Shown here piece after piece: positions 28,854 through 42,324 of a DNA stretch of 64,000 bases. The position numbers and the translations under genes are program-made. The stretch is from Zygnema circumcarinatum SAG 698-1b (taxonomy: Eukaryota; Plantae; Zygnematophyceae): the NCBI GenBank assembly GCA_037447605.1, contig CM074805.1:4869361-4933360 (forward strand), in the 5' to 3' direction. The notes beneath the pieces were generated by a model. That model worked only from the letters and a program-made list of their open reading frames with translations. It was not told the DNA's origin and made no database searches. Within the stretch, counting starts at the first letter, position 1; each line of letters begins with the position of its first letter.

Positions 28854-31800
28854 ATGAAGAGGGGGGTGTTGCCACGTGGTGGCCAGCAAGAGGTCAGCCA
28901 TGACGAGCTGGTGCAGAGCTATCTGTCGATATCGGCGGAAGGGCATGTAAGGATGCCCGCCACGTGTTTGGGGGAGAGGAGAGGGGGGATGAGGGGAGGG
29001 GATAGAGATAGAAGCTGGGGGCTTGAAGAAAATGGTTTGAAATATATTCATTTTAATAGAGGCAGTGGGTCAGAAGATTATGGGGGTGTTTACAGAATTG
29101 TGCCAGAAGGGTGGTAGGGGACTGCTAGATGAGAGATTACTAATAACAGTTCTCCTTCCATTTGAAAAACAAAAAAAGAGGAATCACAATATCTGCTTAT
29201 TATTTTCACCTTCCTTGCATGAGAATCAAGCCAACAAAATAATCTGCATATGCTAAACCTCTCAACGGAATTCCCCACATTTCGGAGGATGCAGGGAACG
29301 GCGGTAGCAGCCTCGGAGCACGAGAATTATGGCGAGCCCTACCGTGTGCAGAGCAGCTCACATACATCGAATGTAGACGGTTTTTCGGCCGCAGCCTCTC
29401 CCTCGCACTTTGTGCGTGAGCCGTCGGAGAGCGAAAATCTACAGCTCGTTGTGGCCCAGCAGACCGATACGACGCTCGAGAATCTTATGGTCACTGGCAG
29501 CCTGACGAAGAGGGAGCTTTCTGTGGCGTCTTCCATTGTGATAGACGAGGTGTGGAGGGGGAGAGGGAGAGGAAGGGGGAGGGAGGGGGGTGGGGGGGCG
29601 GTGGGGTGGAGGTAGGAGAGGGGGAGGGGATAGGAAGGGGGGGAGGAGGAGGGAGAAGGAAAAGTAAAGAGAAACGGATAGGGTGAAGAAGGAGAAGTGA
29701 ATGAAAATTGGAAATGGATTACTGGCAGGAAGCTCGAGGAAGTGTGGGAGGTGGGAGCAGAGAGGGGAGTGGAGTGAGGGGGGTGGAGAGGGGAGTGGGA
29801 GAAAAAAGTGAGAGTGGGACACGTGGAGTATGGTCTTTAGGCTGACAAGAGAAAGTAAACGATTGGAGACAAAGTGACTAGGAGACTGTAGCAGAGAACG
29901 AGAGTGCTCTCTGGGAAATAGTACCACATTACTGTAGTAGACAGACGGAGGAGATGAAAAGGTCTGAGCTAACACTCTCTCCCTTCCTCCCTCCGCGTGG
30001 CTATCTCTCTGCCTCTCTCTCTCTCTCTCTCTCTGGCAGAGCCGCGGGGTCTCGCCTTCTCCCGCGGGCGGGCCGTGCCGCATCTGCGCGGCGGCGGTCG
30101 GCAGCGAATTCGAGGCGTGCGAGTGCGCGTTCCGCGTGTGCCGGCCGTGCTGCGAATACCTCCGCCGACACGAGGGGGGGCGCTGCCCGCAGTGCCGCCA
30201 CCGCTACCGCCGACACAAAGGTAATCCGCTCTCTCTCTCTCTCTCTCTCTCTCTCTCTCTCTCTCTCTCTCTCTCCCTCTCTCCTCTCCCTCTCTCTCTC
30301 TCTCTCTCTCTCTCTCTCTCTCTCTCTCTCTCTCTCTCTCTCTCTCTCTCTCTCTCTCTCTCTCTCTCTCTCTCTCTCTCTCTCTCTCTCTCTCTCTCTC
30401 TCTCTCTCTCTCTCTCTCTCTCTCTCTCTCTCTCTCTCTCTCTCTCTCTCTCTCTCTCTCTCTCTCTCTCTCTCTCTCTCTCTCTCTCTCTCTCTCTCTC
30501 TCTCTCTCTCTCTCTCTCTCTCTCTCTCTCTCTCTCTCTCTCTCTCTCTCTCTCTCTCTCTCTCTCTCTCTCCTCTCTCTCTCTCTCTCTCTCTCTCTCT
30601 CTCTCTCTCTCTCTCTCTCTCTCTCTCTCTCTCTCTCTCTCTCTCTCTCTCTCTCTCTCTCTCTCTCTCTCTCTCTCGCTCTCAGCTCTCTCTCACTCTC
30701 TCGCTCGCTCACCCTCTCTCTCTCTCTCTCTCTCTCTCTCTCTCTCTCTCTCTCTCTCTCTCTCTCTCTCTCTCTCTCTCTCTCTCTCTCTCTCTCTCTC
30801 TCTCTCTCTCTCTCTCTCTCTCTCTCTCTCTCTCTCTCTCTCTCTCTCTCTCTCTCTCTCTCTCTCTCTCTCTCTCTCTCTCTCTCTCTCTCTCTCTCTC
30901 TCTCTCTCTCTCTCTCTCTCTCTCTCTCTCTCTCTCTCTCTCTCTCTCTCTCTCTCTCTCTCTCTCTCTCTCTCTCTCTCTCTCTCTCTCTCTCTCTCTC
31001 TCTCTCTCTCTCTCTCTCTCTCTCTCTCTATCTCTCTCTCTCTCTCTCTCTCTCTCTCTCTATCTATCTATATATCTATCTATCTATCTATCTCTATCTA
31101 TCTATCTATCTATATATCTATCTATCTATATATCTATCTATCTATCTATCTCTCTATCTATCTATCTCTATCTCTCTACTATCTCTCTATCTATCTATCT
31201 ATCTATCTATCTATCTACTATCTATCTATCTCTATCTATATATATATATCTATCTATCTATCTATATATATATATATATATATATATATATATATATATA
31301 TATATATATATATATATATATATATATATATATATATATATATATATATATATATATATATATATATATATATATATATATATATATATATATATATATA
31401 TATATATATATATATATATATATATATATATATATATATATATATATATATATATATATATATATATATATATATATATATATATATATATATATATATA
31501 TATATATATATATATATATATATATATATATATATATATATATATATATATATATATATATATATATATATATATATATATATATATATATATATATATA
31601 TATATATATATATATATATATATATATATATATATATATATATATATATATATATATATATATATATATATATATATATATATATATATATATATATATA
31701 TATATATATATATATATATATATATATATATATATATATATATATATATATATATATATATATATATATATATATATATATATATATATATCTCTCTCTC

Positions 31801-40800: not shown

Positions 40801-42324
40801 TGAGAAATAGTGGATTGTTTTGCAGATCACTAATTGGGCTGTGCTTTACTTCCTCGCCCTCTTCCTTTCCATCTTTGCGACGGCGATACTCGAAATCCGT
40901 TGGAGCGGTAAGAGGAGCTTAAAAACCCAAAACAATAAAATAAAATAAAAAAATAAAAATGTTACCATTCTTGCCCAGGATATCTACTCCTTAAGCTGGT
41001 TTTAGTGGAATTTTTTTTTTTTTTTCCATTGACATCGTTTGGGAATTTGTGTAGGCGTGTCTCTGGAGGAGTGGTGGCGGAACGAACAATTTTGGGTTAT
41101 TGGCGGAACATCGGCACATCTTGCTGCAGTTTTGCAGGTGCCCGTCCCTCTCTTCCTCCCTCTCTCCTCCCTCCTCTCTTTCCCTCCCGCACTCTCCATC
41201 TTTCCCCCCCCCTCACCCTCTTTCGTCCTTTATCCTCTCGTTCCTCCCCCTCTGCCATTTCTCCCCTTGAAAAGCATTCCTCTAATGCAGAATCAACGAA
41301 ACTTAAAAAGCGCATTTTGTGATATCCTCATCCTCATCTTCATCTTCATCCTTGTCCTCATCCGTACTAGCTTGAGCTTCTCGCAGGGTCTCTTGAAAGT
41401 CTTTGCGGGCGTGGACGTGCACTTCACGCTCACCGCGAAGGCCGGCGACGGCGACGATGAGATGGCGGAACTCTACACCGTGCGGGTGCGTGCGTGCGAT
41501 TGCTGCCGACCACGTGAAAATGGCTTCGTTTCAAGAATATGGAACCAAATTTGCAAAAAAATTGTCTCTAACTCCTCTTCCTCTTCTTTCTCCTCTTTCT
41601 CTCTCTCTTCTCTCTCTCTCTCTCCCTTTCTCTCTCTCTCTCTCGCTCTCTCCCTCCCTCTTGCACTCCGTCCCATTTCCTTCTCGAGCAGTGGACTTGG
41701 CTCTTCCTGGTGCCGTTCACAATCATCATCGTCAACGCACTCGCCATAATGGCCGGCGTAGCGCGCGCGTTCAACAGTGGAGAGAACGGGCAACTTGGTG
41801 CCTCTCTCTCTCTCTCTCTCTCCCTCCCTCCCCCTCACTCTGCTCTCTTCATTTCTCTTTTTATTTTTCCCCCTCTCTCTCTCTCCCCCTCTCTCTCTCC
41901 CTAACTCTCTCTCTTGAGATGTACCTGTTTACTTCGTTGGCCCCTTCCTCTCTCTTTCTCTCTCTCCCTCTCTCCCTTGAGATGTACCTCTATAAATTCT
42001 TTCCTTTTTCTGGATTGCTTGCAGGCCAATTGGTAGGACAAGTCTTTTTCTCGGCGTGGGTGCTCGTCCACATGTACCCCTTCGCCAAGGTACGCACCTC
42101 TCATCGAGTGCAATTTGGGACGAGCGAACCACACACCTCTCAATAATAGACACGAAACGAGAATCTTTTTTAATTGAATGCATATGGAATGTCTGAAATC
42201 TGTACTTTCACATGTGCAGGGCCTCATGGGACGCAGCCAAAAGACGCCCACAATTGTGATTGTGTGGGCGCTGCTCCTCGCGATTGTTCTCTCCCTCCTT
42301 TGGACGGACATTGGTATTGTGTGA
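28854..42324 (+). CDS. CESA: Cellulose synthase superfamily protein (GT2), CesA/CslD-like, ~30 exons; start at 28854 (extra first exon) or 29250
   Basis: RING-type Zn finger CRIC...[15 protein letters not shown]...[12 protein letters not shown] (30040-30220). Also [81 protein letters not shown] ([11 protein letters not shown]), QVLRW and C-terminal TM exons. Frames are consistent across canonical splice sites plus two GC donors. Stop TGA at 42322-42324, unless spliced further at GTATTG. Confidence 0.93.
30229..32850. repeat. ~2.6-kb compound dinucleotide microsatellite (CT)n-(CTAT)-(AT)n-(CT)n-(AT)n-(CT)n filling a CesA intron
   Basis: Seen directly in the sequence; it accounts for the spurious 974/1012-aa SL/YI ORFs. 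Confidence 0.95.
38228..39240. repeat. ~1.0-kb (CT)n microsatellite in a CesA intron
   Basis: Seen directly in the sequence. Confidence 0.95.

What the first reader, a model, noticed from the sequence alone, without database searches (positions are those of the whole stretch)
28854..42324. Cellulose synthase that is a mosaic of CesA and CslD signatures
CesA-like features seen: [33 protein letters not shown], a short P-CR (KVDYL...VQPEFV.ERR.MK...PWPGN), NMKGLDG, GSAPINL and RLKF.ERLAYINT. CslD-like features seen: CEC spacing in the Zn finger, STADP, REYDEFK, GDH.G, HNKKAG, VTGY.MH, NLTDRL and [11 protein letters not shown]. Established: CesA/CslD-like intermediates have been reported from charophyte algae. 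Inference: this gene may lie near the CesA-CslD split or in an algal-specific clade, and it serves as a marker for the source lineage.
Basis: partly seen in the sequence, partly recalled or inferred. Interest (0 to 1): 0.7.

Follow-up and report, generated by a model that had tools for sequence, protein, structure and literature searches.

The report
Algal cellulose synthase, CesA/CslD-like type
This is a real, expressed 30-exon cellulose synthase gene of a streptophyte alga whose mix of CesA-like and CslD-like features is the already published hallmark of the algal "CESA/CSLD-like" proteins, so it is a new member of a known group.

Summary
The gene is real. I built a 30-exon, 1074-residue reading frame on the + strand (29250-42324). 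Spliced contigs from four public runs (three studies) confirm every junction from 32991 to 38108. One junction jumps the N gap (36107-36116), which lies inside a GC-AG intron, so its flanks are continuous and in frame in the mRNA.

The start at 28854 is not supported; ATG 29250 is the likely start.

In a maximum-likelihood tree the protein sits with Closterium, Mesotaenium and Spirogloea proteins (support 100/99). That group lies inside an algal clade with Chara and Klebsormidium (90/92), outside both land-plant CesA and CslD. Placing it alone beside either family is rejected (AU p<1e-49).

At 127 sites that separate CesA from CslD it is CesA-like at 59, CslD-like at 26 and neither at 42. All algal relatives show similar counts. 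The CslD-like states are therefore shared with the whole clade, which suggests inheritance rather than convergence.

Published work already describes this pattern for charophyte CESA/CSLD-like proteins: CslD-like N terminus and RING spacing with a CesA-like P-CR (PMC11641006, PMC6566377, PMC4023592).

Verdict: observation confirmed, interpretation supported, a new member of a known kind. The scan noted a second similar gene on other DNA of this genome (s1-350955).

The parts
29250..29549 (+). Exon 1, with the inferred start ATG at 29250; encodes a 100-residue N-terminal extension
   Evidence: In-frame TGA at 29220 and a GT donor at 29550. Residues 70-100 match the N-termini of Closterium, Mesotaenium and Klebsormidium homologues (E 8e-7 to 2e-4). 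Contig length arithmetic puts the 5' exon back to about 29170. The junction to exon 2 was not seen directly.
30040..30220 (+). Exon 2: RING zinc finger (zf-UDP)
   Evidence: PF14569, E 1.5e-11. The 3' end joins to 32897 according to the loose-end sequence of X2 and X4.
30229..32848 (.). 2.6-kb (CT)n/(TA)n microsatellite that fills intron 2
   Evidence: Tandem Repeats Finder, score 2439.
32897..32991 (+). Exon 3
   Evidence: RNA joint 32991>33122, GT..AG.
33122..33220 (+). Exon 4 (not recognisable by homology)
   Evidence: RNA joint and depth; donor GT at 33221.
33414..33559 (+). Exon 5 (YGYGSIVW)
   Evidence: Contig pieces 33415-33559 and joint 33559>33826.
33826..33894 (+). Exon 6
   Evidence: RNA joint; donor at 33895.
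34144..34257 (+). Exon 7 (first transmembrane region)
   Evidence: A contig branch point at 34141 and pieces reaching 34256; acceptor AG at 34142-34143.
34624..34707 (+). Exon 8
   Evidence: Pieces of X1 record 1 and the joint at 34706.
34856..34993 (+). Exon 9 (STADP)
   Evidence: RNA joints; PF03552.
35253..35397 (+). Exon 10 (first catalytic Asp, DDG)
   Evidence: RNA joints; PF03552, E 2e-21.
35555..35617 (+). Exon 11 (start of the P-CR)
   Evidence: RNA joints.
35834..35971 (+). Exon 12 (P-CR: REYDEFK to GDHVGMVQ)
   Evidence: RNA joints. Aligns 1-46 without gaps to solved CesA P-CRs such as 5JNP and 6WLB.
35972..36335 (+). Intron 12, GC-AG, containing the assembly gap 36107-36116
   Evidence: Joint 35966>36331 with 6 ambiguous letters in X2 and X4. 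The only canonical reading is GC..AG at 35971|36336.
36336..36395 (+). Exon 13
   Evidence: RNA joints.
36596..36664 (+). Exon 14 (HNKKAG)
   Evidence: RNA joint at 36595. The donor fits the position arithmetic of X2 record 6.
36836..36925 (+). Exon 15 (DCD motif)
   Evidence: Piece of X3 record 8 from 36836 and the joint at 36923.
37099..37221 (+). Exon 16
   Evidence: RNA joints in up to four runs.
37367..37438 (+). Exon 17 (NMKGLDG)
   Evidence: RNA joints in four runs.
37570..37732 (+). Exon 18 (class-specific region)
   Evidence: RNA pieces 37566-37730. It is followed by a second GC-AG intron, 37733-38009.
38010..38107 (+). Exon 19
   Evidence: RNA pieces 38008-38108. The loose end reads on into exon 20.
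38228..39252 (.). 1.0-kb (TC)n microsatellite inside intron 19
   Evidence: Tandem Repeats Finder, score 1973.
39258..39344 (+). Exon 20
   Evidence: The 5' end is confirmed by the loose-end sequence at 38108. The donor rests on GT-AG, frame and homology.
39559..39666 (+). Exon 21 (TED, VTGYMMH)
   Evidence: Homology, GT-AG and frame; PF03552. No reads were laid here.
39822..39868 (+). Exon 22 ([11 protein letters not shown], start of QxxRW)
   Evidence: Homology, GT-AG and frame.
40111..40203 (+). Exon 23 ([11 protein letters not shown])
   Evidence: Homology, GT-AG and frame.
40489..40591 (+). Exon 24
   Evidence: Homology, GT-AG and frame.
40826..40907 (+). Exon 25
   Evidence: Homology, GT-AG and frame.
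41055..41137 (+). Exon 26
   Evidence: Homology, GT-AG and frame; PF03552.
41387..41485 (+). Exon 27
   Evidence: Homology, GT-AG and frame.
41692..41797 (+). Exon 28
   Evidence: Homology, GT-AG and frame.
42025..42089 (+). Exon 29
   Evidence: Homology, GT-AG and frame.
42220..42324 (+). Exon 30, ending with the stop TGA at 42322-42324
   Evidence: PF03552. Contigs X2, X3 and X4 run 1213-1234 nt beyond 38108. That fits 978 nt of remaining CDS plus about 235-256 nt of 3' UTR.

Best explanation
This is an intact, transcribed gene for a RING-bearing family-2 glycosyltransferase. It belongs to the streptophyte-algal group that the literature calls CslD-like, CGA CesA or CESA/CSLD-like. The genome it comes from places with Zygnematophyceae. 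The protein most likely works as a cellulose synthase catalytic subunit. Inferred steps: it takes UDP-glucose at the D, DxD, TED and QxxRW active site, extends a beta-1,4-glucan chain, and passes the chain through its own transmembrane channel; the N-terminal RING, the P-CR and the CSR would mediate assembly into multimeric (probably rosette-type, homomeric) complexes. The mosaic is not a chimera. The algal proteins appear to keep ancestral states that land-plant CesAs lost (long N terminus, C-x-C spacing in the RING, STADP, REYDEFK, HNKK, NLTDRL, WATGS). They also lack the inserts that CslDs gained in the P-CR. Shown here: gene structure, expression and splicing, domain content, intact catalytic motifs, clade membership. 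Inferred: substrate, product and complex formation.
For: The model has 30 exons, 1074 residues and no internal stop; 27 introns are GT-AG and 2 are GC-AG. Spliced contigs in four runs from three studies confirm the junctions 32991-38108. Pfam finds PF14569 plus PF03552. The catalytic motifs are intact: DDG 416, DCD 584, TED 787, QVLRW 827, and there are hydrophobic segments in the expected places. The protein is 71% identical to Closterium proteins, about 60% to Chara and Klebsormidium, 53% to moss CesA (1110 bits) and 44% to CslD3 (897 bits). The careful ML tree gives the Zygnematophyceae subclade 100/99 and the algal clade 90/92. AU tests reject MODEL beside land-plant CesA or beside CslD with p<1e-49 under both LG+F+G4 and PMSF C20. 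The diagnostic-site tally of 59/26/42 is similar across the clade. Indels: C-x-C RING spacing, 113 residues before the RING, no CslD P-CR inserts. PMC11641006 describes this same pattern for charophyte CESA/CSLD-like proteins.
Against: No biochemical or genetic evidence exists for this protein. Four related zygnematophyte CESAs failed to complement Arabidopsis secondary-wall cesa mutants (PMC13016765), although that is a heterologous-context result. The start codon and the exon 1-2 junction are inferred. Exons 21-30 rest on homology and canonical splice sites only. The CslD sample is angiosperm CslD1/2/3 only, and no outgroup was retained in the final tree. For that reason 'ancestral' is inferred from the clade-wide distribution and the short stem, not from a rooted reconstruction.
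Confidence: 0.85

Rival explanations
1. It is a direct co-orthologue of all land-plant CesAs. Under this reading the zygnematophyte subclade is the true sister of land-plant CesA, and its exclusion from them is an artefact of fast evolution on the land-plant stem. The correct label would then be simply 'CesA', as Feng et al. 2024 state for Zygnema.
For: The algal clade follows the species tree (Klebsormidium, then Chara, then Zygnematophyceae), so orthology predicts land plants next to Zygnematophyceae. The land-plant stem is long, 0.63. The algal clade as sister of all land-plant CesAs is the best or second-best backbone (AU p 0.78 and 0.54). Land-plant CesA nested above Klebsormidium is not rejected under PMSF (p 0.066). 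PMC11096116 calls all zygnematophyte homologues co-orthologues of land-plant CesA.
Against: Land-plant CesA as direct sister of the zygnematophyte subclade is rejected at p 0.006 (LG+F+G4) and 0.012 (PMSF). The protein lacks all the land-plant CesA signatures tested: C-x2-C spacing, short N terminus, STVDP, REYEEFK and HHKK.
Confidence: 0.25
2. It is a canonical rosette CesA nested within land-plant-type CesAs, and its CslD-like residues are scattered convergences.
For: Pairwise similarity is higher to CesA than to CslD (1110 against 897 bits). The P-CR is CesA-like.
Against: MODEL as sister of land-plant CesA costs 128-162 lnL units, AU p about 1e-50. 22 of the 26 CslD-like states are shared by at least half of 12 other algal proteins.
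Confidence: 0.01
3. It is an algal CslD orthologue.
For: It has a long N terminus and C-x-C RING spacing. It carries STADP, REYDEFK, HNKK, NLTDRL and [11 protein letters not shown].
Against: It has none of the three CslD P-CR inserts. Identity to CslD3 is only 44%. MODEL beside CslD has AU p<1e-80. The whole algal clade beside CslD has p 0.037 (LG+F+G4) or 0.054 (PMSF), the weakest of the three backbone resolutions. PMC11641006 reports CSLDs as absent from Zygnematophyceae.
Confidence: 0.03
4. The mosaic is an artefact: two different genes joined across the assembly gap, or a recombinant or gene-converted locus.
For: An N gap lies within the span (36107-36116).
Against: RNA-derived contigs in two runs bridge the gap-containing intron in frame. 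CslD-like states occur on both sides of the gap and are interspersed with CesA-like ones. The same mixture is seen in homologues from five other genera.
Confidence: 0.01

Closest known systems
Charophyte CESA/CSLD-like proteins, also called the 'CslD-like clade' (Yin et al. 2014, PMC4023592) and the 'CGA CesA clade' (Fitzek et al. 2019, PMC6566377); features described in PMC11641006
   Same: RING, P-CR and CSR are all present. The P-CR is CesA-like and has no inserts. The N terminus is long and the RING cysteine spacing is CslD-like. The protein groups with Klebsormidium and Chara proteins in the ML tree.
   Different: Nothing structural. The closest protein in the collections searched is only about 71% identical (Closterium sp. 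NIES-68, P0167). The gene has 29 introns, two of them holding kb-scale (CT)n arrays.
Zygnematophyte 'CesA' proteins: Closterium P0036/P0167, Mesotaenium endlicherianum P0169, Spirogloea P0172. By literature only: Zygnema ZcCesA1 (PMC11096116) and the four CGA CESAs tested in PMC13016765
   Same: Same subclade, support 100/99. 64-71% identity over the catalytic and transmembrane parts. The same diagnostic-site pattern.
   Different: The public gene models have only 29-58 residues before the RING, against 113 here. Either those models are cut short at the 5' end or this start lies too far upstream.
Land-plant CesA, e.g. Physcomitrium CesA7 (P0181); solved structures poplar CesA8 6WLB and cotton CesA7 7D5K
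   Same: Same domain order and catalytic motifs. The P-CR has the same length and aligns without gaps. 53% identity overall.
   Different: Land-plant CesAs have one extra residue between the third and fourth RING cysteines. They have only 36-40 residues before the RING. They carry STVDP, REYEEFK, RDHPG, HHKK, NLSDRL and WALGS instead.
Land-plant CslD, e.g. Ipomoea CSLD3 (P0087)
   Same: Long N terminus and C-x-C RING spacing. Shared STADP, REYDEFK, HNKK, VTGY, NLTDRL and [11 protein letters not shown].
   Different: CslDs carry three inserts in the P-CR that are absent here. Identity is 44% overall and 37% in the RING, against 58% to CesA in the RING.

Membership tests
Cellulose synthase superfamily (GT2, Pfam PF03552) | Cellulose_synt domain | tested here: met
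   Seven exon translations hit PF03552 at successive profile positions 1-707, with E from 1e-10 to 2e-21.
Cellulose synthase superfamily (GT2, Pfam PF03552) | Catalytic D, DxD, TED and QxxRW motifs intact | tested here: met
   DDG 416, DCD 584, TED 787, QVLRW 827.
RING-bearing CesA / CslD / CESA-CSLD-like group | N-terminal zf-UDP RING plus P-CR and CSR | tested here: met
   PF14569, E 1.5e-11. The P-CR exon aligns with solved CesA P-CRs. A variable region at 666-745 lies in the CSR position.
Land-plant (rosette) CesA | Groups inside or directly with land-plant CesAs in a phylogeny | tested here: not met
   Land-plant CesA is monophyletic at 100/100 without it. MODEL beside land-plant CesA has AU p about 1e-50. 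Land-plant CesA beside the zygnematophyte subclade has p 0.006 or 0.012.
Land-plant (rosette) CesA | Short N terminus (36-40 residues before the RING) and C-x2-C spacing of the third and fourth RING cysteines | tested here: not met
   113 residues before the RING, with the start inferred, and C-E-C spacing.
Land-plant (rosette) CesA | P-CR without inserts | tested here: met
   gapless match to 5JNP and 6WLB.
CslD | Inserts in the P-CR | tested here: not met
   All three CslD inserts are absent.
CslD | Groups with CslDs in a phylogeny | tested here: not met
   CslD is monophyletic at 100/100 without it. MODEL beside CslD has AU p<1e-80. Only angiosperm CslDs were sampled.
CslD | Long N terminus and C-x-C RING spacing | tested here: met
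Charophyte CESA/CSLD-like (CGA CesA) proteins | CesA-like P-CR combined with a CslD-like N terminus and RING spacing (criterion of PMC11641006) | tested here: met
Charophyte CESA/CSLD-like (CGA CesA) proteins | Clusters with the charophyte-only sequences (Klebsormidium, Chara and others) rather than with land-plant families | tested here: met
   Algal clade 90/92 and zygnematophyte subclade 100/99.
Cellulose synthase (functional sense) | Makes beta-1,4-glucan and assembles into terminal complexes | not testable with these tools
   Inferred from conserved motifs and family membership only.

The most novel reading that the evidence does not exclude
The algal clade that holds this gene (Klebsormidium to Zygnematophyceae, in species-tree order) is a separate lineage from land-plant CesA, not its direct ancestor. 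Land-plant CesAs would then descend from a paralogue that split before Klebsormidiophyceae diverged and whose algal copies were lost. No living alga would then have a true CesA orthologue. The rosette-forming enzyme of Zygnematophyceae would be a CESA/CSLD-like protein.
Probability: 0.2. Interest if true: 0.5.

Novelty: new member of a known kind. Interest (0 to 1): 0.3.

Why it matters
The gene gives a fully resolved, RNA-supported exon structure for a zygnematophyte member of the proteins thought to resemble the common ancestor of CesA and CslD. Such a sequence helps in reconstructing how the two land-plant cellulose-making families arose: shortening of the N terminus and a one-residue RING insertion in CesA, and P-CR inserts in CslD. 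It also helps place the source genome. It does not open a new question, because the clade, its mosaic character and the disagreement over what to call it are already in the literature.

Tried and rejected
**Searches that gave nothing or little**
- A word search with the RING region, read inside the stop-free frame 29968-33171, found no hits.
- The representative search with exon 10 returned mostly fragments. Only about 19 sequences were long enough to use.
- The CslD search returned only angiosperm CslD2/3, so bryophyte and algal CslDs are missing.

**Trees and tests that had to be replaced**
- The first quick tree, with long-branch outgroups (Papaver P0106, Nymphaea P0001, Logan P0086) and badly modelled Zea and Oryza rows, gave an unreliable root. 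I dropped those rows.
- treekit's own AU test did not finish in two runs.
- Constrained IQ-TREE searches failed on thread count and then timed out, because only one CPU was available.
- A background job was killed.
- I replaced these with AU tests on 11 fixed backbone rearrangements under LG+F+G4 and under PMSF C20.
- A first diagnostic-site count with partial CslDs gave only 29 sites and was redone.

**Limits of coverage**
- Reads could be laid on only one stretch (32860-38200). The exon 1-2 junction and exons 21-30 therefore have no direct RNA check.
Exons were searched by reference. The joined sequence was built only inside the script sandbox, for alignment and trees. No structure prediction was made.

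**Readings rejected**
- A start at 28854.
- A chimera across the gap.
- Recombination as the source of the mosaic.
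Full report
**What is there**

The span 28.8-42.3 kb holds many short stop-free segments on the + strand. Their translations hit Pfam PF14569 (zf-UDP RING finger) once and PF03552 (Cellulose_synt) seven times, at successive profile positions 1-707. Earlier notes of this scan call the genome a streptophyte alga. They also list a second, similar cellulose-synthase-like gene on another piece of the genome, s1-350955.

**Gap test and gene model**

Public runs X2-X6 hold 34-39% of the sampled words of 33300-36100. 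That is roughly what exons alone would give.

I laid contigs of X1-X4 (three studies) on 32860-38200. They skip 11 intervals with canonical ends, and further junctions follow from the listed pieces and from position arithmetic within the contigs. After resolving the ambiguous letters, all junctions are GT-AG except two GC-AG introns, 35972-36335 and 37733-38009.

The first of these introns contains the assembly gap 36107-36116. Contigs of X2 and X4 join 35971 directly to 36336, and the frame reads on as GDHVGMVQ|VFLQPDG with no residue missing relative to homologues. The gap is therefore intronic. The two sides belong to one transcript and are in frame.

The remaining 3' exons were set by canonical splice sites, frame and gapless fit to homologues.

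The 5' end needed more inference:
- The exon carrying the conserved N-terminal motif ([16 protein letters not shown]) runs from ATG 29250 to 29549. It has an in-frame TGA at 29220 and joins in phase to the RING exon at 30040.
- Its last 30 residues match the N-termini of Closterium, Mesotaenium and Klebsormidium homologues (E 8e-7 to 2e-4).
- Contig lengths agree with this model. X2 record 4 has about 380 nt upstream of exon 2.
- Three contigs extend 1213-1234 nt beyond 38108, which fits 978 nt of remaining CDS plus a 3' UTR of about 235-256 nt.

The result is 30 exons, a CDS of 3225 nt and 1074 residues, with one stop at 42322-42324.

External searches were done exon by exon, by reference.

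**The observation**

I aligned it with 12 land-plant CesAs, 6 CslDs and 15 algal proteins.

| Feature | This protein and CslD | Land-plant CesA |
|---|---|---|
| Third/fourth RING cysteines | C-E-C | C-x2-C |
| Motif at 381 | STADP | STVDP |
| Motif at 479 | REYDEFK | REYEEFK |
| Motif at 557 | HNKK | HHKK |
| Motif at 791 | VTGY | LTGF |
| Motif at 820 | NLTDRL | NLSDRL |
| Motif at 831 | WATGS | WALGS |

The P-CR has the CesA length and lacks the three CslD inserts. It aligns end to end with the solved CesA P-CRs 5JNP, 7CK1, 6WLB and 7D5K.

The protein has 113 residues before the first RING cysteine. CslDs have 118-133, apart from 89 in the partial Musa CslD1 row; Chara has 113-143; land-plant CesAs have 36-40, apart from 11 in the N-terminally short Ceratopteris row.

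**How mosaic, and is it special to this gene?**

I took the 127 alignment sites where land-plant CesAs (at least 90% agreement) and the CslD set (all rows agree) are each conserved but differ from one another.
- This protein has the CesA state at 59 sites, the CslD state at 26 and neither at 42.
- Closterium, Spirogloea, Chara and Klebsormidium proteins give similar counts: 50-62 CesA-like and 24-33 CslD-like.
- 22 of the 26 CslD-like states are shared by at least half of the 12 other algal proteins.
- The CslD-like states are scattered, most of them in the C-terminal third, and lie on both sides of the gap.

The mosaic is therefore a property of the whole algal group. It is not a convergence, a recombination or an assembly artefact.

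**Phylogeny**

The closest full-length proteins found are:

| Comparison | Identity |
|---|---|
| Closterium (catalytic and transmembrane part) | 68-71% |
| Mesotaenium endlicherianum | 64% |
| Chara braunii and Klebsormidium nitens | 57-60% |
| Physcomitrium CesA7 | 53%, 1110 bits |
| Ipomoea CSLD3 | 44%, 897 bits |

The careful ML tree used 34 rows, 1008 columns and LG+C20+F+G4 by PMSF. It places the protein in a zygnematophyte subclade (100/99). That subclade sits inside an algal clade with Chara and Klebsormidium (90/92), in species-tree order. The stem of the algal clade is 0.076. The stems of land-plant CesA, CslD and a second, long-branched zygnematophyte clade (P0074, P0090, P0082) are 0.63, 1.33 and 1.16.

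AU tests on fixed backbone rearrangements gave the following:

| Topology | p, LG+F+G4 | p, PMSF C20 |
|---|---|---|
| This protein beside land-plant CesA | about 1e-56 | about 4e-50 |
| This protein beside CslD | about 1e-84 | about 1e-82 |
| Algal clade sister to land-plant CesA | 0.78 | 0.54 |
| Land-plant CesA and CslD together | 0.46 | 0.78 |
| Algal clade with CslD | 0.037 | 0.054 |
| Land-plant CesA direct sister of the zygnematophyte subclade | 0.006 | 0.012 |

Membership in the algal clade is firm. The deeper backbone is not resolved. Caveats: there is no outgroup in the final set, the CslDs are angiosperm only, and Chlorokybus and Coleochaete sequences are missing.

**What is known**

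- Yin et al. 2014 (PMC4023592) found a charophyte-specific 'CslD-like' cluster.
- Fitzek et al. 2019 (PMC6566377) found it nearer to CesA and renamed it the CGA CesA clade.
- Wang et al. 2020 (PMC7027972) derive CESAs and CSLDs from CESA/CSLD-like ancestors.
[quoted passage not shown] It concludes that CESAs shortened the N terminus and CSLDs gained P-CR inserts.
- Feng et al. 2024 (PMC11096116) report two CesA homologues in Zygnema and call all zygnematophyte homologues co-orthologues of land-plant CesA.
- PMC13016765 found that four zygnematophyte CESAs do not complement Arabidopsis secondary-wall cesa mutants.

The proposed Arabidopsis complementation has already failed for close relatives.

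**Function**

The catalytic motifs are intact (DDG 416, DCD 584, TED 787, QVLRW 827). Hydrophobic segments flank the catalytic region as they do in CesAs. The gene is transcribed and correctly spliced in samples from three studies.

The most likely role is a beta-1,4-glucan (cellulose) synthase catalytic subunit that assembles through its RING, P-CR and CSR. This is inference from family membership and was not tested.

**Source lineage**

The tree position is after Spirogloea and beside Mesotaenium plus Closterium. Together with the presence of two such genes in the genome (compare PMC11096116), this fits a zygnematophyte, possibly Zygnema or a relative. This is inference only. No protein more than about 71% identical was found in the collections searched.

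**Verdict**

The gene is a new member of a known kind and is of modest interest.

Noticed in passing
window 30229-32848 and 38228-39252: Two introns of an expressed gene are almost filled by pure dinucleotide arrays on the sense strand: 2.6 kb of (CT)n with a (TA)n core, and 1.0 kb of (TC)n. The transcripts are nevertheless spliced across both.
   Followed up: partly
window 35972-36335 and 37733-38009: Two of the 29 introns are GC-AG rather than GT-AG. Spliced contigs support both junctions.
   Followed up: yes
window 33944-34143: Contigs of X2, X3 and X4 cover the 3' part of intron 6 continuously into exon 7. The depth is 34.6 against 22 upstream and 74 downstream in X2. This could be intron retention, unspliced precursor or an internal transcript start.
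   Followed up: no
window 29692-29721 joined to 33812: One X3 contig joins sequence from inside intron 1 (29692-29721) to 33812, which is 14 nt upstream of the exon 6 acceptor. The join has no canonical splice ends. It is probably an assembly chimera, but it is unexplained.
   Followed up: partly
proteins P0074 (Spirogloea), P0090 (Mesotaenium), P0082 (Closterium): A second, long-branched zygnematophyte clade of CesA-like proteins (stem 1.16) shares the STADP and HNKK states. Its placement relative to CesA, CslD and the main algal clade is unresolved. It may correspond to the genome's second gene (s1-350955) and to the 'class B' CGA CESAs of PMC13016765.
   Followed up: partly
proteins P0036, P0165, P0167, P0169, P0172: The public gene models of the closest homologues have only 29-58 residues before the RING, against 113 here and 113-190 in Chara and Klebsormidium. 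Several of those models may be truncated at the 5' end.
   Followed up: no
window 17572-17581, 23930-23939, 43951-43960: Three further 10-N assembly gaps lie elsewhere in the window.
   Followed up: no
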